A stretch of 57,135 nt of DNA, the filler included, from Sluysia triapertura (taxonomy: Eukaryota): assembly GCA_046118255.1 (NCBI GenBank). It is 4 parts of 4 records of this genome, joined end to end, with 100 filler letters (N's around TTAATTAATTAA, not from the genome) between each part and the next. Parts side by side here need not be neighbours in the genome. Positions count along the whole stretch, not along the records: positions 1 to 12,989 come from JBJNIA010066624.1; 3 more parts are not named here. One strand, written 5' to 3'. The notes below the pieces were generated by a model. That model searched no databases, was not told the origin of the DNA, and was given only the letters and a program-made list of their open reading frames with translations. Position 1 is the first letter of the stretch, and every line of letters starts with the position of its first letter. This document shows positions 113 to 28,374 of the stretch, one piece after another. A program made the position numbers and the translations under genes.

Positions 113-364
113 ATATAATGGGGAAAAACAAAACAATAAAAAGAAAGTTTAATAATAAGGATAAAGAAATGATAATGATAACAATAACGTGATTATTATA
201 AGTTTAAAAATAATGGTATTGTTGATGTTAATATGAAAGTTATTATGTGGAAATTGTGGCAATTATATTATACGATAATAATACTAATAATTATTATATA
301 TTTTAATACGATTGGATCTGTAAAAACAATAGTTATAGTTCGTGATAATTATGTATAATGGTTA

Positions 365-757
<393 letters not shown>

Positions 758-768
758 TTAGGTTATAT

Positions 769-900
769 GATTTGGACGATGTGATTTGGACAGTGATTTG
801 GACATCTTGATATTTAATTTAACAAAAAATAATGACTTTGATATTTAATTTAAAAACGATTTATTTTATGACTTGATATTTAACAAAAAAAGATTTATTT
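769..900. repeat. Short local tandem repeats (3x gatttggac; 3x ttgatatttaa)
   Basis: Read directly from the sequence. Confidence 0.7.
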
Positions 901-1790: not shown

Positions 1791-1989
1791 CAGAAGATAA
1801 TCTTTTGTAAGTAGGAGAGAACACTTGCAATTTTGACATGGAGTAGAATCACAAATTTAATTTAGTCTCGTATAATAGTACCAAATTCTCCAGCGTTTGA
1901 TTTTTCAACTCACTGGTACAGTAATTAAATGATTTCAATTTTTTACGTGACAAATAATTTTTATAATTGTGATTGTACTTATGTTCCTA

Positions 1990-2785
1990 TATTGTAACTG
2001 TACATTATGTTGAATAATTAGCAACGATTGGGCATCCAATCAGAATAACAAATGTATATAACAAAATTAGAGTGATTGGATGTCCACTCAACTGGCACAT
2101 ATACATATGAAACCTGTGCCTAGTAACCACCACTAAAATATGTCATTTAATGACAGATAGATAATTAAAACTTTTGTATAAAATATTAATGATGATAATA
2201 AATTAATTACAATAATAATAATTATTATAATAAAATAAATAAATAAAATAATAATAACAAATAATAATGCCAATAATATAGTTATATAAAAATACATAAA
2301 CCTTATATTCTTTACACGATCTTTTCTTTTCTTTCATTATTAAAATTCATAACATTTATTTTCTTCTTTCTTAACATAAAAATCTTTATTAAACCACATA
2401 AATAAAATTTTCTTTTAATTACAGAGCTTGAAATGAATTTACAGTATAATTTTAATGTTTTACGAATGTGTTAAAGAATAAGTGTTGAAGAATTGTGAAC
2501 TTGAAATGTTTTGGATTAATTTTAACATGTGTATTTGATAATTTGATATGCACATTGTGATTCTAATGTTGTAAAATTGTGAATTAAGAATGTTTTAAAT
2601 GAAATTTAAAATGTACATTAATGGTTTGAATGTAAGTATAATTTTGATGTTATGATATTGTGAATTTAAAATGTTTTGAAATGTAAAAAGGTTTTAATGG
2701 ATCTGAAAAAAATAAAATGTAAGAATATATGATATTTCATGTGAAGTGGTAATTTGAGTTTTAAATGAAAAGGTTGGCCACCACA
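1990..2785 (-). mobile_element. TGTGG-terminated module M1 (subfamily A)
   Basis: Terminus ggttggccaccaca at 2772-2785. The reverse complement of 2290-2720 aligns with 8310-8830. Palindromes tgtcatttaatgaca (2141-2155) and gattgggcatccaatc (about 2027-2042). Confidence 0.8.
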
Positions 2786-3096
2786 TCAGGAAAGCAAAGT
2801 ATCATTCAAGTCCACATTCCATTTATAAGTAAAATTTTCATTATTCCATTTTATTTAAGTTTAATAATATTAATTTTATTAATATTAACATTTTGTGTTT
2901 TTCGGATTTGTAAATTTTATGTTTATTACATTTGAATTATATTTTTGTATGCTTAATTTTGCATTTTTGACAGGATTTTCAACTTTTATTAGTGTTAACT
3001 GATATTTATTTGATAAAGGATAAATTATATTAATTTCTGTTACATATTAATTTGATTTTACGAGTTCAGAATTTAAATTATTCGATTTATTTTAAA

Positions 3097-3412
3097 TTAT
3101 TTCAATGATAATGCACCACAATGACTCGTATAAATCCACAAAAATATGTCAGGGAAATTTTATTCTCTTCCAGTTCTATATTATTTAATACGAAAAAAGT
3201 ATTTAAACCATAAAGTCAAATCAGAAACGATATGAGTTTTTGTAAGCTTCACAAACTATGTGCGAATTCTTTTATCTTCCTGAAATTAGACACTACGTAA
3301 ACATTTTTACTGAAAAACCTTTAATGAAGTACCTAAACTACTTCAATCTAGAGAAAGAGATAGTTAAAATGTAATGTTGGGTTTGTTAAAGGATGAGGTT
3401 TACGCACGGATG
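3097..3412 (+). mobile_element. Possible decayed Tc1/mariner transposase fragment
   Basis: Frameshifted FQ.DNAP-like motif near 3100 and GLLKDEVYAR near 3380, resembling FQQDNAPxH and WGxLKxxVY. Confidence 0.35.
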
Positions 3413-4085
3413 TCGCATATAGTAAAGTAAATGAATCAACATTTTCTAATTATTAAATTTTTACAACCAAAAATATATTTTTTTAAAATCTTGTAAAACG
3501 GTCAACCGAGTTTGAACTCGCTAACTAACTTATTATTTATATTATAATTTTTATAAGAATTTCTGTAAAGATTAGTTTTTCTTTGTGTTGATAATATACG
3601 TTAAGGATATTACATTGTTTTTAATCAAGAGTCTAATAAATTCATAAAATTTATTTTTGAAAAGCAACATCTTAGTAAGGGTTGCGTAATTATAATGTAT
3701 ATAATTTTAATTAAACAACACCTCGCAAAGGGTTGTATTATAAATTAATTAAAGAGTTACAAAGAGTTTACTCATACAAGTAAAGAAGTTTTTCTAAAGT
3801 TAATTAAGTTTTAAAAATTCCTAATAGTACGTCTCTAGTAATGGTTTAAATCGCATATATTAGGTGAACCGACTCCTTAGATATTTTGTAAGATTAGGTT
3901 TTTAATAGAAACACTTGCATAATTCAGTTGCATTTTTAATTTTCATTTTTGTTAAGGGATTCATTTAACGAATCGCAGTAACTTATAAAATTTCACAATA
4001 ATAAATTAGAGCATATAATAGCTTTCTCCGAATTTCATTCGGCACGTAAAATCTACATTTGTCAGAAAGATGAAAGTAAAACTTA

Positions 4086-4202
4086 TAGAATAAAGTAGAT
4101 TTTTAACGTGAGTCCACCAACATACTAGGCTTACCAGTCACGGCTAGCTGTTGGATTTTTTCTATAATTGAAAGGATTTTCACTAAGGGAAAATATCTTA
4201 AT
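4086..4202 (+). repeat. Dispersed repeat family E (GTGAGTYCACCAA core), copy 1
   Basis: tagaataaagta...gtgagtccaccaacatactaggcttaccagt matches 25752-25860(+) and 27180-27304(-). Confidence 0.8.
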
Positions 4203-5230
4203 GTTTGCTTTAGTTTACAAATGCTCTAAAGTTAAGGTGTGTGGGTATTTAGTTTTTTTTTCAAATTTATAATGACAATTCACAGTAATTAAGATTTTAG
4301 TTACAGCACTGAAAACCGTTTGTAATTTTAATTATAACAATGAAAATCGTTTATAAATTATTTTACTGAAATCCAATTAAAAGGATTTTTTTAAATAAAT
4401 GATTTTACGTTGTCAAAATTATACTCTGACCATAACTTTACTTATAGTGATAAACTAACGTATTTAAGACTACCTGTTCAATAATAATATAGACCTTTAT
4501 CAAATGTAGTATATTTATCAAATGAAGTACAACGAAAAAATAGGATCAATAATAAATTTATAAAATTATTCGATAATTAACTGTTAGTTAATTAAATTTT
4601 TAGACAAATCAGTTTAAAAATAGATTTTACGTGAAACTGTTAAAAGTTTCAATATTTTTTACTAAAAGTATTTTACGTATATTTTGCGAAGATACTGTTT
4701 TTAGTATCGAATCTTAAAAGGAAATAAACTAACGGTACAAAAGAATTTTAAAAGCCAAGCTTGATTAATTTTAATTTTGCGTCCAGAGCCAAGTTGATCT
4801 GAAATAATATACAACTGTGTTCAACTGCATGCAAAACTTGTATTCAATTGAGATTAGTTATGTTCAAAAATTATAAAACTCGCAAAAGCTGTATAAATTT
4901 TTGTGTTTGTCTGTTATGAGGTAATGTAAGAATTTATAAAAAAAAGTTATAATAAAATCAATTAATATTTACACAAATGTAAACCACAATATGTATGTCT
5001 GCACAAATAATATGTTAATAACAATATGTATCAATTGATTATCANNNNNNNNNNNNNNNNNNNNNNNNNNNNNNNNNNNNNNNNNNNNNNNNNNNNNNNN
5101 NNNNNNNNNNNNNNNNNNNNNNNNNNNNNNNNNNNNNNNNNNNNNNNNNNNNNNNNNNNNNNNNNNNNNNNNNNNNNNNNNNNNNNNNNNNNNNNNNNNN
5201 NNNNNNNNNNNNNNNNNNNNNNNNNNNNNN

Positions 5231-5430
5231 TTATTAATACTACCATTATTTTTTATTAATATTATATTATCACTATCATTATATTACTATTATTATTATT
5301 AATATTATCACTATTACTATTTTATTATTAATACTTTTAATACTATTATTATGCTATTATTATTATTATAAATATCATTATTACTATTATTATTATTATT
5401 GTTGTTGCTGTAAAGATTATTCATTATTAA
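5231..5430. repeat. Degenerate (TAT/TAC)n microsatellite beside an assembly gap
   Basis: Read directly from the sequence. Confidence 0.85.
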
Positions 5431-6337
5431 CAAAAGTTCTTTGTAAGATTATTTAAAATTTAATTAAATAATTAAAATGAATAATTAAAGTGTATTAAAA
5501 ATAATAAAATTATTGTTAATAGTTATAATATAGAAAAATATAGTGTAAATTAAAAATTAAGTCAAAAGTATTAGCATAATAGTAAACAATAAAGTGAATA
5601 AAATAATAGTAATTAAAATTGAGAGAAAAATAATAACAGACTATAGTGTAAATGAAATAATATCAAAAAAGTAATTTAACTACATATTACTGTATTAAAA
5701 AATTAGAAAATGTAGTTATTATGAAAAATAATCAAGTATAAATAAATGGGTTCCAGTCTTCGATTTCAAGTATTATTTGAAGGTATTTCGTATTTGGTAT
5801 TCAATTTAATTTTGGTATTCGATTATTTATTGAAGAAGAAGTTATTCATTGAAGATGTTCAAATACTGTTCGAGTTTAAGGTATTTGTTGTACAATTACT
5901 ATTTAGTCAAAGGTATTTAAATAACTGACATTTTATAATTTAAGTTACATTAATATTTATCAGAATAACATTTAAAATAATTAAATTTAAACTTAAAAGA
6001 AAATTAAGATCACGCAAAATATATTTTATATTGTGAATATTATCCGAACTATTTTTGTAGACCTTGTATTTGTTACTTACATTTGATAAATAAATTTTAG
6101 TTAGTTTAGTTTATATTATTTGATTTTACGGAGAAGAACTTGAATTTTAACATTAATCAGACAAAATTACATTTCCATCTCTTACACCAGAGACGAGTGG
6201 AAGGGTAACCTCCAGATATTATTATAAGTGTCTGAAAATAGTTATCTTAAACTCAAGTTGCAATCGTAGGATTTACAAGTAAAGTAGAAGCTATTATCAA
6301 AGACGTAAAAACTTAAAATCATAACTTTTCTCCTAAC

Positions 6338-6500
6338 ACTATTATTATTACTATTAATGATACTATTGGTATTACTGTAATTAATATTACTATTATTATT
6401 GCTATTATTATTACTAGTATTACTATTATTATTACTATTATTATTATTACTATTGTTATTATTACTACTACTATTACTATTATGACTATTATTATTATTC
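6338..6500. repeat. Degenerate (TAT/TAC)n microsatellite; source of the spurious poly-Asn ORF
   Basis: Read directly from the sequence. Confidence 0.85.
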
Positions 6501-6849
6501 TGTGTTAACATAAAGAATTAGTGCCTGAAATTTTAGATATTTCAATTACATATTTTTTGCTTCTGGTAATTATTAATTATATTATTCCGAACATAAGAAA
6601 GTTTTATTTTTCATCAAAATAAATCCTACAAAAATTTATTACCTAGCTAAAAGAAAACTAATAACTCCTGTTTATGACATGACACAAAACTGCTAAAATA
6701 ACTCTAATTTTAAAACACGAGCTTTAAGAAATCACTTAATCACAATAATATGGAAATGACAAATGACAATTTTTGTCATTATTTTTATTTTAATATTACC
6801 TAGATGTTATTATTGTATTTGTCTTTGTAATTCTGAATTGGAGATAAAA

Positions 6850-7440
6850 CGTTAAATATGAAAATAAGATCAGAATCTAATGATCTTGATTCCTCAGAAT
6901 GTGTCAAGTATCAGCTTCTCGTTGATATCGTTGAAAATGCAAATAATATCGATAATTTTGAAACTTATCATAAAAATCTCATCGTTGAAATAGAGTAGAA
7001 ATAAAAATTCTCGAATCCACTTACATAATCATAAAGTAGCTTTATACAAGGTTCAAGGTTTATCAAATCTGAAAATAGAACTGAGTATTGTTTGAAAGAT
7101 GCTTCTAATAATTTCGAAATTTCTGATTCGTTTGCTTGTTATTGCACAATAGCTAAGTATAATTTAGCCTTACCTAATATTATTACAATGATTATAATTA
7201 TAATCAAAATGTTCTCGTGAGACATTCTTTCGAAGGATTCTCCAAAATCAAGAGTAATGCCAACTTTTATTTGGAAATTGTAATATATTTTACTAATAAA
7301 GTTCATCTTTAATTGGAATTTGATCTCTTAGATTTATCTCTAAATATATCCCAAAATTTAAGTCGTTTTATTCGAATTTGACTGTGTTCAGATAGATTTT
7401 AGGTTAAGAAATTATAATATAGCTTATGTGCCCATTAGAG
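6850..7440 (-). pseudogene. Decayed ORF of unknown family, paralogous to 36640-36950
   Basis: Frameshifted translation NLKSI...RD...MNFISK..YNFQIKVGITLD versus NIKSI...RD...MNFISR...YFINITFGITFD at 36640-36870. Confidence 0.45.
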
Positions 7441-8066
7441 CCTTGGTCTTACCAAACATTTTGATAAAGGATGTGAATTATCATATTTCGTAATTTTGTA
7501 ATAAAATATTTGTAATAAAATATTTTGAATTAAAATAGGCATTGAATCAAAACATAAATATGAATTGTATTAAATAACACAAAATTTCATTTCGGTTTGA
7601 CCAGATTTTCTAGATTAAGGAAATGCATTACAGGATCATAACGACTTTCACTTTCATTAAAGAGGAGGATAGTCTCAAGTTTGCAACTCGATATGAATGT
7701 AAAAAATGATGCTACGATTACTTTTTCCATCGTATTCGATCAATTAGAATCTGGGTGATGAAAATCGAGTTGAATGTCGCTAATTGGTTTATTTAGTACT
7801 TTGAATATTTTTACTACAAATTTGATTGAATAATGAGTATTGTCAACTTTACCATTCACATTAATTTCTGTGAATTGTTAAAATAACTGAACACGATTAG
7901 AAATTAATAGAATGTTTCAAAAGAAAATGATGTGTCAAAACAATGTAAATTTTATTTTATTTTCCAAATATTAATCGTTGCCTTAATGGTTTTAAGATTA
8001 AGAATAATTATGATCTGAATTGAGTCGATCGATGGATTTAATTGTCTTTCACCACTAAAACTAGTA

Positions 8067-9390
8067 TGTGATGGTCAACCGATATTTTAAAATTTTATTT
8101 TAACAATTTACAACACAATCACTCTTCAGAACATATCATAATTCTTTATACTTTCAAACACTTTAGACATAAAATTCCGTAGCTTCAAAATCATACTGAA
8201 CATCGGAAATAATCAAAGATTACTTTAAAAAATTAATCGAAACATTTTAAATTAATTTAACATATCGCACATTTTATAACAATTTATCTTTTCTATTATC
8301 AAAACCTTTTTCATATTTTATTTCTTGCAGATCCACTAAAACTAGTCTAATTTCAAAACCCTTATTAATACACATTAAATCTTATTCAAAACATTTTAAA
8401 TTAACAAGTTTTCAACATCAAAACTATATCTTCAGTTAAAACCATCAATCTACATTTAAAAATTCATCTAAAACCTTTTATTCATTATCTTATAACATTA
8501 GAATCACAATTACATCTCATTATCAAATTTACGTCTTAAAAATTAATCCCAAATTTTTCAAGTTTACAATCCTTAACACTCAATATCTAATACCACTGAA
8601 AACATTAAATTAATACTTTGAAATCATTTTAGACATTGAAATCAAATTATTACTTCTTTAACATCTTTAGTTACGTATTATTTTCTTCAATCATTCTTCC
8701 ATCAATTCACTTTACGTTACATATCTCAGTGACTAAATAAATAAAGTTTATTTTAAAAATTTTAGTATGTCTAGAAAAAAGATAAAATAAAAGAAGCTCG
8801 TGTTCAATACATCAAGAGGGATTTATGTATTTAAATTTCGTAATTTTGCGTTTTCTATAATTTTGTTATTATTATTATTTATTATCATTATTAGTTCTTA
8901 TTGTGATTATCATTTTATTTCATTTCGTATTTTGCATAATCATGATTGTTAAATTTTATCATTGTTAATTGTTGTGACTATTTACTGTAACGTCATCAAT
9001 TGACAGTTTTTGGTTTAGTTTAATACAAAAAATTGATTAAACGTTAATTTATGACAGTTTCTATGTACAGTAGCGAATATTACATACACTCGCATGTTCA
9101 TGCTTTAATTCTGACCTGATTTGACGTCCAATCAGTCTCATTTTTATTATTATCATCATCATTCAAATGTGGACGTCCAATCGTATTCAATAGTCACCAA
9201 TCAATGTTATTAGACTTCCAATCAAAACACTACATGGACAGTGGATATTTTTATACACTTATTACAATATGTTCATAGTAAAAAATATTAATTAAAACAT
9301 TTTAGAATTACAAAAAAGACGATTTGATTAAAAAGAATAATAATTATAGTAAAATAGGCATTATCATAATTTTACTAAATTTAATTGACA
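8067..9390 (+). mobile_element. TGTGG-terminated module M2 (subfamily A)
   Basis: tgtgatggtcaacc at 8067, a C/A-rich tract homologous to M1, atgtctagaaa at 8768, (tta)n near 8866, cgtcatcaattgaca at 8991-9005, and gacgtccaatc twice plus further CCAAT boxes in 9120-9225. Confidence 0.8.
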
Positions 9391-10159
9391 ACGATATTTT
9401 ATGTTTATATTGTTTCTTACTTTATAATGTCTATGTATAATATTATAATTATTAGTGAAACGGTTGGTTTAAGATTTTATCATAATTATGGTATTCCAAT
9501 AATGTATTTCAATAAATCATTTAGTTATCCATTGCATATGCTATTCGAATATTTTCATAGAAATATAGTACTCCACTGTCAATTAAATGACGATTTAAAA
9601 TTTAGTTTTGTTAACGACAAGAACTTATAAAGATGTATGTGATGTATATCCATATCTTAAAGAACAATATAGTCATTCAATAAATGATTTTGCCAACCAT
9701 TCTATGTCTCATGAAATAAACGTATTATTGTTGAATATTATAAATCCTTTTAATAATGAAATCTATTGTAGACTGATGCAAGTACAAAATATTAGTACAA
9801 AATGCTTAACTTCTTCATTCTATCAATTTCAATTAAAAGAACTCAGTACAATTAGTACAAACGATAAAAGTTCATAAATTTAGATTTTAATCACAGTAGT
9901 TATGTATCAATTAATGAAACAAAATGAAAGTATCGAATCATTAATAACAACAATTAATGATCAAGTTATATTAATATATGTTAATGTATTTATAACGCCC
10001 CGTAGATTGATAGATGTCGATTCAATTGTCATGACAAATAGAACATTATCACCAAGGACAAACATGTCGAATATCAAATCAAAGTTTAGTCGTTTAAAGT
10101 TCTTCTATGGTACTAGCAAACCTTTCAACATGAATATATCAAGTTATGCTGATGAAATC

Positions 10160-10350
10160 AAACACTACAAGATGTCTCTCCTTCCATTCGAAACTACATC
10201 ATCTGGCGAGTGTTCAAAATACGGCAAAATTTGTCAATATTCACACGGTTTCAATGAACTTCAAGACATTTTTGGCATTCCGACATATCACAATAAATAT
10301 TATGATCGAGTAAATGCTCTTTTAGCAGACGTGACAGCAATATTATTTGA
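10160..10350 (+). pseudogene. ZFP36/Tis11-type tandem CCCH zinc-finger fragment, degenerate
   Basis: HYKMSLLPFETTSSGECSKYGKICQYSHGFNELQ resembles RYKTELCRPFEESGxCKYGEKCQFAHGFHELR. The first Cys is lost and the second finger is frameshifted (KCSFSRR). Confidence 0.65.
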
Positions 10351-12462
10351 TCCAGTTATTCGAAAACTATAATTGAAAATATCTCATGGCATATTCGAGA
10401 AGAATACAATCTATGTTTAAATTCATGTTGCTTTATATTCAAAGATAATAAAAATAAATAATTGTACCTTTTATTTCTACGTTTTATTTAAATTCAGAAA
10501 AATTAAGATTAATTTTGTATTAGAGTTTCTCATTAAAGATAATTATAAGATAAATTTTCAGTTTTATATAATAATAATAATCAAATTATTATAAATAAAA
10601 CTAATCTATTTAACCAAACACCACAAAGTATTAGATAGATCAGCTGAGCTTTGAACATGTTATTGAATATAGACGACTTAAAATTCGTAAATAAAATTAA
10701 AATATAACCTTTCTTGTAATCATTGTAACACACAACAATCATAAGCAAAAACCAAAACTTATTAACAATCAAACTCACTTAACAATAACACTCACACGTA
10801 CTTATCCATTTTTCCATACACACATACAGAATTTAAAATACTACTATTGTTTTCATTTGTACAATGTTATTATTATCACTGTCACCTTATTTTCGCTTGT
10901 TATCATCATTATGTCAATGTTATTCTTTGTAATTGTCATTTTTATCGCTTTGTCATCACTATTGTTCGCACTAAAGAAATTTCTTAACGTAACCTTACCT
11001 TGAATAAATATCTTAACAAAGTCAATTATTTTAACAAAAGATTTAGTCTAGATATATGCATCATAGTAAGTAATTGTTTTAATAATATTATGTCAGCATT
11101 AGACAAACCTGGGTTGTATAATTTAACTGAGCTTACTTTCGTAAATGATATAATACGAAAGGCTCAAATTTAAACTACGAGTTAAACGTCAAATCTAACA
11201 AGCTTTTTGTCTTTATCGATCTCATTGTAACATAAAAATGTGCACGATAAATTAATTCCCTTAAACTCGAATGCTTATTTAATCAACAACTATCAATTAT
11301 CAAAATTCCCAATTTCACCTTAAGGAATTAGTATTTTTCAATATTTGAAATCGATTTTTTCCGTCTGAAATACATAAATATAATTAATTAATATTCTGAT
11401 TATAATATAATGTCAACATATCACATTCGAGATACACAATTTATTTACTAATTTTCATGAATAAGAGTTAGGAATTGTTAAATTGTTATATTTATCCCAT
11501 AATTAAACTGGTAAAAGGACATATGTGTCCCAAAGCATTTTTTCAAAAACCATACATTCTAAAAGTCTAAAATTATGCAAACAAATTCCTTTACATATTA
11601 CAGCACATATCTTAACTGGCCAAAAGTCATATTGAAAGGGTTGAAACCATTACCAAAAAGAGTTTAGCTGAAATTTTAAATTACAAACTTAAAATAAATA
11701 AAATAAATTCAAAATCAATAAATTAAAATGATTGGTGAGTAGGTTTACAAGTACTATTTCTATTTCTCCTTGTTTTGATTCTGTTTGGTTAGATCTTCCC
11801 AATGGAAATTTGAGCAGTGGCGTGTCTGTAATCATCCAGATATTTATGCCAAACGTTCCAGGTTTTGTAGAATTATAACTCTTAAAACTACACAGCCATT
11901 TGTAGTACAGAGTTACTATTCAAAAATCAATATACTTTTTCTTGCAATTGTTATAAATTTTTTATTAATAATTATAATTTTTATTATTTTTTGTTTTATT
12001 TTTAATTATTTTTCAGGAAATTATTGGATAACAAAGAGAGTAGACAAAGTACTGATATAATAGTTTGCATATACTTGATTTGTAGTAAATTGTGTTATGA
12101 CATTCTACATGAATAAAATTTCTGTATGCTTTTTTAACTATTATTTTACTTTCAGAAGTTATTTCCATGACAACAGTCAGTAAATTGCATATATTTATAC
12201 ACTTTTGATTAATAGTTTTTAGTATCATTGAAAAATGCAGAATTTTATCACAAAAATAGCTGTCTTTAGTCTAATAATTGTTAAATTGTAATCACAATGA
12301 ACGCTGGTCTACTTAAAAGCAAGTATGCAAATATGTGGTCATTTAAATTTAGCTAAGAAGAGTAGAGAAGTATGCAAAATAAGTTATAAGATGATCACAA
12401 ATAATTAATTAGTGATATAAGGAAATTTTTAAGTATTAAAATATGTTGTTATTTTTTATTAG

Positions 12463-12938
12463 CCCAAATTCATATTCCAATGAGTGATCTTATTGCTTCT
12501 GGTTCATGTGCTACTGAAAAGTGGTATACACCATTTTCTCCTAATCAAACGACTTCCTCTCTAGTTCCGGTGCAATCATGTATTTCTCCAATCATATCTA
12601 ATCAATCAGATATTAGTTGTTCTCGTACAAATTCCATTTCCACTGTTAATACCAATGATACGACTATGTCGATGTCTCCATCAATTTCTACCAATCAGGT
12701 GCCAACTGTTCGAATTAAAATCAGATATCAATCAATAAAATTACTCATTCAGTCAAGTTATAAACCTTTACTTGATGTTTTATTCGAATCTGCATTACCA
12801 CTAGTGAAATCTATGGAAGCATTAATTAAAGTGAAATACAAAGAAGATTTGATGCGTACTCTGCTTAATGTTCTGATATATCATACACCGAATAAGGACT
12901 TATACCAGAATTTTATAGCCGATTTAATATGTACAGAG
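12463..12938 (+). CDS. Internal exon of a SynGAP/DAB2IP/RASAL2-family Ras GTPase-activating protein (end of C2, start of RasGAP)
   Basis: Acceptor tttattag| at 12462 and donor |gtaata at 12939. Open frame with TEKWY...VRIKIRYQSI...KVKYKEDLMRTLLNVL...FIADLICTE, matching the recalled TEQWY...VRLKARYQ...VKGKEEVASALVHIL...FLSDMAMSE. Confidence 0.85.
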
Positions 12939-12989
12939 GTAATATATTATCATTACTATAATTATTTTATTTCATTTATCATTAATATA

Positions 12990-27429: not shown

Positions 27430-28374
27430 TTGTCAATAAGAACTGAGACCATTTAATTGTGCTAAAATAATGATTAAAATGATTGTTTGTAAATAAGACC
27501 AGTAATGTCTGGCGAATATGCATCACGATGATGGTGTTGAATCAAATTATTAAGATCCTATGAGTTGGTCAACTGAAAATGGTCCAAGCAAATTACAATC
27601 ACTGTTGCTATCGTAAATTATAAATTTGTGTACCAACCAACACTGTCATTAGTTGACAGTTGATAAGATGGATTATAGTTTATTTAATTAAAACTGCCAA
27701 CTAATGATAGATCTGAAATTGAAATTTTTTACAATTAATAGTATTGATGATAATAATGCTGATAATAATAATAATTATTATTATTATAAAAATAAATTAA
27801 TAATAACATAAATAGAATAAATTAAAATTAATAATAATAAAATAAATTAAAATTCTTAGCATAAATTTCTTTATGTTTTTTCTTTTAAAATTTTCTTTTT
27901 TATCTAAAATTACATATTTTTTGTATCTATTTTTTATGTGCTATGTACTTTAACGTATAAGAATAAAATAAATAATACATTTATTTTCTTCATTTTCCTT
28001 TCTTTGTGTAAGTTCTATTGTCGTTTCGTGTGATTCCTAGTTCTTTTAATATTTCTATTACTTAGCACATTTTTAGATAAGGATAATGTAAAAATAGATC
28101 AGTTTGACATGGTTCTATTTGATATACGTGTTGCGAAATTGATTGTTGAAGGAAGAATATGTGACATCACAAAAATATAAAGAATAAAAATTATAAAAGA
28201 GGTTAGTAAAATTGGACATGTTCCATTTAGATTATTATTATTATGTTTTGAAATAAATTTAAAATGTAAATTTATTGATTTTCGATGTTATGAATGGTTT
28301 TAATGTTATCAAATTGTGAACTTAAAAGTATTTCAATATATTTATAATTTTGAGTAATAAGGTTGGCGACCACA
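27430..28374 (-). mobile_element. TGTGG-terminated module M4
   Basis: Terminus ggttggcgaccaca at 28361-28374, a G/T-rich tract similar to M1, a (taa)n tract at 27745-27840, and tgtcattagttgaca at 27644-27658. Confidence 0.75.

What the first reader, a model, noticed from the sequence alone, without database searches (positions are those of the whole stretch)
2026..2155. Two fixed-spacing palindromes conserved across diverged modules: ATTGG-N4-CCAAT and TGTCA-N5-TGACA
Seen: ATTGG-N4-CCAAT variants in M1 (attgggcatccaat, attggatgtccact), M2 (tgtggacgtccaat, atttgacgtccaat), M3 (gttggatgaccaat), M5 (attgaatggccaat) and M6 (attggctgtctaac). TGTCA-N5-TGACA variants at 2141, 8991 and 27644. The spacing persists while surrounding DNA barely aligns. 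Known: CCAAT is the NF-Y box and TGACA is a TALE (Meis/Prep) half-site. Inference: binding sites for a dimeric protein, kept by selection, forming a portable promoter or mobilisation site placed next to the cargo.
Basis: partly seen in the sequence, partly recalled or inferred. Interest (0 to 1): 0.75.

Follow-up and report, generated by a model that had tools for sequence, protein, structure and literature searches.

The report
Inverted repeat modules with CCAAT clusters
Two diverged, oppositely oriented copies of a roughly 1-kb non-coding DNA module each carry a cluster of CCAAT-type boxes and a TGTCA/TGACA near-palindrome; these look like protein-binding sites, but one window cannot show whether they belong to a gene switch or to an old mobile element.

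Summary
The motifs are real. M1 (+ strand) has boxes at 2026-2041 and 2074-2089 and a palindrome at 2141-2156. M2 is an inverted copy with four boxes (9118-9223) and a palindrome at 8991-9006. A third palindrome sits at 9576-9591.

- **Not chance:** ATTGG-N4-CCAAT with at most 1 mismatch occurs 4 times against 0.30 expected. GTCAT-N3-6-TGACAG occurs 3 times against 0.01 expected.
- **The "palindrome" is lopsided:** the GATTGG half is invariant in 6 of 6 boxes. The other half matches in only 23 of 36 positions.
- **The best-conserved part lies elsewhere:** a C-poor array of ~84-bp tandem repeats (2431-2680 vs 8629-8385) is 78% identical between the copies.
- **Searches that found nothing:** ORFs with a protein-family match inside the repeat, RNA families, structured RNA, transposase or viral domains, sharp ends with target duplications, and relatives in public collections.
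- **Setting:** AT-rich intergenic DNA of an unidentified invertebrate, possibly a nematode, between a homeobox exon and CCCH and RasGAP genes.

My best reading is a duplicated cis-regulatory cassette with NF-Y-type boxes plus a homeodomain- or bZIP-type dimer site. Binding-site arrays near the ends of an old foldback-type transposon are the main rival. Interest is modest.

The parts
1990..2791 (+). Module copy M1 (whole arm, fuzzy outer end)
   Evidence: Collinear with M2 in inverted orientation. blastn gives 2431-2680 vs 8629-8385 at 78%. The windowed identity profile is, and the outer shared word ATATTGTAA at 1989/9270 is.
2026..2041 (+). Box M1-1: GATTGG-N4-CCAATC, a perfect 6+4+6 palindrome
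2074..2089 (+). Box M1-2: GATTGG-N4-CCACTC (right half matches 5 of 6), 48 bp after box M1-1
2141..2156 (+). Second motif, M1 copy: TGTCA-N5-TGACA, extended to ...TGACAG
2160..2300 (+). AT-rich simple-sequence spacer (7-13% GC) with TATA-like strings
   Evidence: TATA-like strings are not informative in 77% AT DNA.
2431..2720 (+). Array of ~84-bp tandem repeats in M1, 3% C on this strand; the best-conserved part of the module
   Evidence: It contains no ORF, and RNA folding gives z-scores of -0.85 and +1.46.
2773..2791 (+). Short GC-richer patch shared with M2; innermost recognisable homology
   Evidence: Read: 16 of 19 identical to 8079-8060 on the - strand.
8060..9270 (-). Module copy M2 (whole arm); longer than M1 because it has more repeat units and more boxes
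8189..8629 (-). Array of ~84-bp tandem repeats in M2, 4% C on the module strand
   Evidence: Unit matches at 8578-8498, 8417-8367 and 8253-8189. RNA folding gives z = 0.0.
8991..9006 (-). Second motif, M2 copy (one half reads CGTCA)
9118..9133 (-). Box M2-4 (right half matches 5 of 6)
9167..9182 (-). Box M2-3 (right half matches 3 of 6), 49 bp before M2-4
9187..9202 (-). Box M2-2 (right half matches 0 of 6), 20 bp before M2-3
9208..9223 (-). Box M2-1 (right half matches 4 of 6), 21 bp before M2-2
9487..9500 (+). Degenerate box (2 mismatches) 76 bp from the third palindrome; weak evidence
   Evidence: About 6 such matches are expected per window by chance.
9576..9591 (-). Third copy of the second motif, outside the M2 arm
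   Evidence: 3 matches against 0.01 expected

Best explanation
M1 (about 1990-2791, + strand) and M2 (about 9270-8060, - strand) are two diverged, inverted copies of one non-coding module. Each copy carries, in order: a cluster of CCAATC boxes, a GTCAT-N3-4-(T)TGACAG near-palindrome, an AT-rich spacer, and an array of ~84-bp repeats.

I read the two motifs as protein-binding sites of a cis-regulatory cassette (promoter-proximal or enhancer-like) that was duplicated. The boxes are most likely read one at a time by the CCAAT-binding trimer NF-Y, or by another factor that needs only the GATTGG(A) half. The second motif is most likely read by a dimer of a homeodomain (TALE-type) or bZIP-type factor.

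The palindromic look of the first motif is probably a partly decayed feature of the repeated unit, not the thing being recognised.

**Shown:** the motifs, their clustering, their order and orientation, and their higher conservation than the immediate flanks.

**Inferred:** that proteins bind them, which proteins, and that the cassette regulates transcription. The cassette may itself have been spread by a mobile element, so this does not exclude the transposon rival.
For: - **Enrichment and clustering:**
- **Same order and orientation relative to the homologous repeat array in both copies:**. The two aligned boxes are 48 and 49 bp apart.
- **Conservation:** motif cores 23/23 and 16-mers 40/48, against 108/163 for the rest of the region and a 323/552 background.
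- **Recognition unit:** the left half is invariant in 6/6 and the right half matches 23/36, which points to a single-box unit. All seven clustered boxes are exact CCAATC.
- **Spacings compatible with NF-Y:** box pairs 41, 48 and 49 bp apart can be co-occupied (rule in PMC4982600).
- **Orientation toward genes:** both clusters face outward toward gene-like sequence, namely the homeobox ORF at 739-362 on the - strand and the CCCH ORFs from 9385 on the + strand. Read in those gene directions, the boxes are CCAATC.
- **Precedent:** CCAAT boxes next to TALE sites are a known pairing in animal promoters and enhancers (bioRxiv 10.64898/2026.02.16.706105). NF-Y-bound CCAAT arrays carried by repeats are known from LTR12.
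- **Nothing else explains the region:** no coding or RNA-gene explanation.
Against: - There are only two copies and no expression or binding data.
- The conservation test was chosen after seeing the motifs, and the aligner favours matches.
- M2 boxes 20-21 bp apart and the palindrome halves 10 bp apart are closer than the 24-bp minimum for two NF-Y trimers.
- The canonical 11-bp TALE/NF-Y spacing is absent. Here the box-to-palindrome distance is 53-113 bp.
- The three TGACAG copies sit in an arrangement that I do not know as a TALE dimer site.
- The best-conserved part of the module is the repeat array, not the motifs.
- The two outward genes are unrelated, so a shared promoter is not an obvious need.
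Confidence: 0.4

Rival explanations
1. The two arms are the long, degenerate terminal inverted repeats of one old, non-autonomous foldback-type DNA transposon spanning roughly 1960-9290. The repeated boxes and the near-palindrome would then be binding sites for its transposase near the ends of the element. The 84-bp arrays would be the internal sub-repeats typical of such arms.
For: - Inverted arms about 5.3 kb apart.
- The arms differ in length because they hold different numbers of sub-repeats and boxes (2 against 4 boxes), as in foldback-type elements (from my own knowledge, not tested here).
- The short motif repeats sit near the outer ends of both arms.
- The interior has no recognisable host gene and contains an assembly gap and microsatellites.
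Against: - No sharp termini or target-site duplication: 13 candidate end pairs against 6-24 in shuffles, none with a duplication.
- No transposase or any mobile-element domain in any ORF tested.
- The arms diverge unevenly (78% in the array, about 66% at the outer end). Neutral decay of once-identical arms would not be expected to do this.
- A third palindrome lies outside the arm.
- No other copies could be found.
Confidence: 0.25
2. The motifs are neutral leftovers. An inverted segmental duplication copied a stretch that already held short tandem units containing GATTGG, and M2 later gained two more by a local ~21-bp tandem duplication. The apparent conservation arises because only units that still contain the word are recognised.
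For: - Boxes were located by searching for the word itself, so the 6/6 invariance is partly circular.
- M2 boxes 1-3 are spaced 21 and 20 bp, as a tandem duplication would give.
- The right halves decay freely (23/36).
- A degenerate GATTGT lies 58 bp upstream of M1-1.
- Spaced palindromes with GC-containing arms are not rare here: 14 hits, about 10 distinct sites, in 12.8 kb.
Against: - Both aligned boxes and the palindrome survive in both copies while the sequence between them is near the alignment baseline.
- The second motif occurs a third time elsewhere.
- TCCAATCA is the most recurrent GC-containing 8-mer of the whole window.
Confidence: 0.2
3. The matches are pure chance in AT-rich DNA.
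For: With 2 mismatches allowed the first pattern is expected about 6 times per window.
Against: Zero of 200 shuffles reach the observed counts for the stricter patterns. The clusters also sit at matching places in two homologous arms.
Confidence: 0.02

Closest known systems
NF-Y (CCAAT-binding trimer) box clusters in promoters and in repeat-borne promoters such as human LTR12
   Same: Several exact CCAAT boxes in direct orientation within about 100 bp. Some spacings (41, 48, 49 bp) allow co-occupancy. The boxes are carried on a repeated module next to tandem repeats, which echoes LTR12 arrays (PMC4982600).
   Different: Half of the spacings (10, 20, 21 bp) are below the 24-bp minimum. The inverted-pair arrangement is not a known NF-Y mode. 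No start site or binding data exist, and the organism is unidentified.
DECA-CCAAT composite element read by PBX/PREP (TALE), NF-Y and Sp2
   Same: A CCAAT box and a TALE-type TGACAG site lie in the same ~150 bp, three times in this window.
   Different: The defining geometry (GAnnGAC, 11 bp, CCAAT) is absent. The distance here is 53-113 bp, and the TGACAG sits in a near-palindrome instead of an asymmetric decamer.
Foldback-type / long-TIR DNA transposons with sub-repeated arms
   Same: Inverted arms of unequal length built partly of tandem sub-repeats. Short motifs are repeated near the outer ends. The interior is non-coding.
   Different: No defined termini, no target-site duplication, no transposase and no other copies seen. 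The arms are only 66-78% alike.
NFI-type palindromic site
   Same: The half-sites share the TTGG / CCAA letters and an inverted arrangement.
   Different: From memory, the known spacing between those letters is three bases longer. This is a lead only, and I did not test it with a matrix.

Membership tests
NF-Y CCAAT box | Exact CCAAT pentamer | tested here: met
   Seven exact CCAATC boxes in two clusters.
NF-Y CCAAT box | At least 24 bp between two boxes that are bound together | tested here: inconclusive
   The rule comes from PMC4982600. Spacings of 41, 48 and 49 bp pass. Spacings of 10 bp (palindrome halves), 20 bp and 21 bp fail, so not all boxes can be used at once.
NF-Y CCAAT box | Location about 60-100 bp upstream of a transcription start, or occupancy by NF-Y | not testable with these tools
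   No expression or binding data are available, and the source organism is not identified.
DECA-CCAAT composite (TALE/NF-Y/Sp2) | GAnnGAC core placed 11 bp (tolerated 10-12) from CCAAT | tested here: not met
   The regex scan on both strands and in all four orientations found 0 matches.
TALE (MEIS/PREP-type) site | TGACAG hexamer | tested here: met
   Present in all three copies of the second motif. A core hexamer alone is weak evidence.
Long-TIR / foldback DNA transposon | Inverted repeats at the two ends | tested here: met
   2431-2680 vs 8629-8385 at 78%. The motifs are in mirrored order.
Long-TIR / foldback DNA transposon | Sharp matching termini flanked by a target-site duplication | tested here: not met
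   13 candidate end pairs against 6-24 in shuffles, none with a flanking duplication.
Long-TIR / foldback DNA transposon | Transposase gene, or many non-autonomous copies elsewhere in the genome | tested here: inconclusive
   No Pfam mobile-element domain in 26 ORFs. The genome is not available. Metagenome and viral pattern scans gave only chance hits.
Structured non-coding RNA gene | Rfam match or a fold better than shuffles | tested here: not met
   No Rfam hit in the modules and no tRNA. Fold z-scores were -0.85, +1.46 and 0.0.

The most novel reading that the evidence does not exclude
The module is a member of a dispersed, lineage-specific repeat family that carries a ready-made NF-Y-plus-homeodomain binding cassette. 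It would seed new promoters or enhancers next to genes in a very AT-rich, poorly sampled invertebrate lineage (possibly a nematode). That would be a repeat-borne regulatory cassette comparable to LTR12 in primates, but with a different architecture: inverted CCAAT pairs, a spaced TGACAG near-palindrome and a C-poor 84-bp array.
Probability: 0.15. Interest if true: 0.55.

Novelty: new member of a known kind. Interest (0 to 1): 0.3.

Why it matters
If the motifs are bound and the module is dispersed, it would be an example outside vertebrates of a repeat spreading CCAAT-type and homeodomain-type sites together. It would also give a handle on promoter structure in a genome where 77% AT makes most promoter signals unreadable. 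If it is only a local duplication, it is an ordinary piece of intergenic regulatory or decaying DNA.

Tried and rejected
- **RNA genes:** Rfam at E up to 1 gave only a weak snoRNA-like hit at 1093-1178, outside the modules. There are no tRNAs.
- **Structured RNA:** folds of the repeat arrays on both strands are no better than shuffles.
- **Coding content:** no ORF of 80 aa or more lies in either arm. Pfam on 26 ORFs of the window gave only the homeodomain and a sub-threshold CCCH finger, with no mobile-element or viral domain. tblastx of the left against the right flank found nothing shared.
- **Transposon ends:** a systematic scan for end pairs and target duplications gave nothing above shuffles.
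- **More copies:** blastn of the arms against all 239 fetched loci gave only 22-30-nt matches.
- **Organism:**
  - Exact-product look-ups failed.
  - The word search with the homeobox ORF found nothing.
  - The representative search with the RasGAP exon gave 43% identity at most. The named hits were mostly nematode gap-2 / Ras-GAP proteins. The source is therefore not in the protein collections.
- **DECA-CCAAT geometry:** absent.
- **A third copy of the array end at 195-345:** not convincing.
- **Literature word search for the palindrome:** noise.
- **Sigma-70 and terminator scan:** not meaningful for a eukaryote.

Full report
**Observation.** The quoted motifs are present at the stated places.
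- On the + strand, M1 has GATTGG-N4-CCAATC at 2026-2041 (perfect), GATTGG-N4-CCACTC at 2074-2089, and TGTCA-N5-TGACA at 2141-2155.
- M2 is an inverted copy. Read on the - strand it has four GATTGG boxes starting at 9223, 9202, 9182 and 9133, and the second motif at 9006-8991.
- M3, M5, M6 and the site at 27644 lie outside this piece and cannot be judged.
Loose matches in unrelated pieces should therefore be given no weight.

**Is it more than chance?** Yes, for the strict forms.
- ATTGG-N4-CCAAT with at most one mismatch: 4 found, 0.30 expected, 0 of 200 shuffles reach 4.
- Exact GATTGG: 11 found, 2.83 expected. Seven of the 11 lie in two clusters of 64 and 96 bp.
- GTCAT-N3-6-TGACAG: 3 found, 0.01 expected.
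- TCCAATCA is the most recurrent GC-containing 8-mer in the window.
- A single spaced palindrome is not remarkable here. There are 14 perfect hits with GC-containing arms, about 10 distinct sites, in 12.8 kb. The signal is the recurrence, not the symmetry.

**Anatomy of the module.** The two copies are collinear and inverted. From the outer end inward each has:
1. **A box cluster.** M1 has two boxes 48 bp apart. M2 has four, at 21, 20 and 49 bp.
2. **The second motif.** It lies 53 bp (M1) or 113 bp (M2) further in.
3. **An AT-rich simple-sequence spacer.** Its GC content is 7-13%.
4. **An array of ~84-bp tandem repeats.** In M1 it spans 2431-2720. In M2 it spans 8629-8189 and has more units.
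5. **A short GC-richer patch.** It lies at 2773-2791 and 8079-8060.

The array is the best-conserved part, at 78% over 250 bp. It is strikingly C-poor on the module strand, with 3-4% C against 18-19% G. In a global alignment, identities are:

| Region | Matches | Identity |
|---|---|---|
| Motif cores | 23/23 | 100% |
| 16-nt motifs | 40/48 | 83% |
| Rest of the motif region | 108/163 | 66% |
| Repeat array | 196/250 | 78% |
| Unrelated flanks (aligner baseline) | 323/552 | 59% |

This test is post hoc and rests on two copies.

**The first 'palindrome' is one-sided.** Across the six boxes the left hexamer is invariant. The right hexamer matches its mirror image in 6, 5, 4, 0, 3 and 5 of 6 positions, which is 23/36 in total. 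That exceeds what base composition would give, so an inverted pair was probably part of the original unit. What is kept now is the single GATTGG(A) half. The 6/6 figure is partly circular, because I found the boxes by that word.

**What it is not.**
- No ORF of 80 aa or more lies in either arm, and the interior ORFs have no Pfam match.
- No ORF tested in the window (26 in all) has a transposase, integrase, reverse-transcriptase or viral domain.
- There is no Rfam family or tRNA in the modules.
- The arrays do not fold better than shuffles on either strand.
- A scan for matching termini with flanking duplications found nothing above shuffles.
- Pattern scans of metagenome and viral collections returned only chance matches.

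**Setting.**
- The window is 23% GC with no CpG depletion (observed/expected 1.02). It has an assembly gap at 5045-5230, which I left as it is.
- To the left, on the - strand, is an ORF with the first two-thirds of a homeodomain at 739-362. Pfam gives 23.6 bits, and the nearest solved structures are GBX1, BARHL, engrailed and Msx1.
- To the right, on the + strand, are a sub-threshold CCCH-finger ORF at 9902-10372 and a RasGAP/SynGAP-type exon at 12438-12941.
- The RasGAP exon is at most 43% identical to anything in 1.8 billion representatives. The named hits are mostly nematode gap-2 proteins.
- The source is therefore an unsampled, fast-evolving, AT-rich invertebrate, possibly a nematode. I could not identify it.

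**Mechanism, with its shown and inferred steps.**
- *Shown:* two motif types recur, cluster, keep their order and orientation, and outlast their flanks.
- *Inferred:* they are protein-binding sites.
- For the boxes, the simplest reader is the CCAAT-binding trimer NF-Y, which binds asymmetrically and is present in all eukaryotes.
  - NF-Y covers about 30 bp (bioRxiv 10.64898/2026.02.16.706105), and two trimers need at least 24 bp between sites (PMC4982600).
  - It could therefore use the boxes 41, 48 and 49 bp apart. It could not use both halves of a palindrome (10 bp apart) or neighbours 20-21 bp apart.
- This fits the one-sided conservation.
- For the second motif, both halves are kept in all three copies and one end always reads TGACAG. 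A dimer is therefore plausible, of TALE-homeodomain type or, given the GTCAT/CGTCA halves, of bZIP type.
- CCAAT boxes next to TALE sites are a documented pairing. Its defining geometry, an 11-bp gap to a GAnnGAC core, is absent here. The module may work like that composite, but it is not a member of it.
- Both clusters face outward toward gene-like sequence and read CCAATC in those directions, which suits promoter-proximal or enhancer use. The two genes are unrelated, and I have no transcription data.

**Rivals.**
- The main rival is an old non-autonomous foldback-type transposon spanning about 1960-9290, with the motifs as its binding sites near the element ends.
  - In favour: inverted arms of unequal length built of sub-repeats, and a gene-free interior.
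  - Against: no termini, no duplication, no transposase, uneven divergence along the arms, and a motif copy outside the arm.
- A neutral-relic reading (segmental inversion-duplication plus a local ~21-bp tandem duplication, with ascertainment bias) cannot be excluded from two copies.
- Chance is excluded.
- The cis-regulatory and transposon readings are not exclusive, because a mobile module can carry host-factor sites.

**Novelty and interest.** Clusters of CCAAT boxes, homeodomain-type palindromes, and repeat modules with sub-repeated arms are all known kinds. This is a new instance in an unidentified genome, with no evidence yet that it is dispersed or active. Interest is modest at 0.3. It would rise to about 0.55 if a genome census showed a dispersed family carrying a conserved binding cassette.

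- Everything rests on one window and two to three copies.
- Apart from one short decamer-like regex, none went into a tool. None is written out here, and the conclusions do not rest on them.
- At one point I also reasoned about what the box spacer might once have been. No such sequence was saved, used or reported.
- The homeobox subclass, the preferred flanking bases for NF-Y, the NFI spacing and the foldback-element comparison come from my own knowledge. They are leads, not tests.

Noticed in passing
768-805 (+): TGATTTGGAC occurs three times in tandem (period 12-13). It lies 30-65 bp upstream of the ATG (739, - strand) of the homeobox ORF. It is one base longer than the TGATTGGA(C/T) boxes of M1 and M2.
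   Followed up: partly
1297-1613 and 1681-1860: Three copies of a ~55-nt unit with a GACCGTAA core and a small hairpin lie at 1297, 1511 and 1559. Next to them is the GC-richest spot of the window (40% GC), which holds two CTAATTAG homeodomain-type sites. This may be another regulatory cluster upstream of the homeobox gene.
   Followed up: partly
362-739 (-): This ORF encodes roughly the first 44 residues of an ANTP/NKL-type homeodomain (Pfam 23.6 bits; nearest solved structures GBX1 and BARHL). The rest of the homeodomain is not within the window on that strand, so a long intron or a truncated gene is likely.
   Followed up: partly
437-520 (-): The stop-free tail of the homeobox ORF gives a marginal RasGAP-like match. 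The match begins at residue 440 of a Steinernema Ras-GAP, exactly where the match of the right-hand RasGAP exon (12633-12941, +) ends at residue 439. The E-value is about 0.07-0.1 in the tblastn setting, so it may be chance. It is unexplained.
   Followed up: partly
9599-10372 (+): Two ORFs lie in one frame, separated by a single stop. The second has a CCCH-finger match below the Pfam cut-off (25.6 against 31.1 bits). It is either a diverged or a decaying zinc-finger gene.
   Followed up: no
12438-12941 (+): An exon of a SynGAP/gap-2-type RasGAP, at most 43% identical to any of 1.8 billion representative proteins. The named hits are mostly nematode. The exon runs to a GT at 12942, and the gene continues beyond the piece.
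   Followed up: yes
2431-2720 (+) and 8189-8629 (-): The 84-bp arrays are almost free of C on the module strand (3-4% C against 18-19% G). A GGATTAA word is kept in both copies. The cause of the strand bias is unknown.
   Followed up: partly
5231-5430 and 6338-6499: Two (TATTAC)n-like microsatellites about 77% alike. The first abuts the assembly gap at 5045-5230. The second gives a spurious poly-Asn ORF on the - strand.
   Followed up: no
832-900, 3653-3742, 4294-4356: Small tandem duplications of 34, 51 and 31 bp.
   Followed up: no
305-316 (+): A 12-mer, AATACGATTGGA, is shared exactly with box M2-3 (9176-9187, - strand) and is followed by TGGATCTG, which also ends both arrays. An alignment did not support a third module copy here.
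   Followed up: yes
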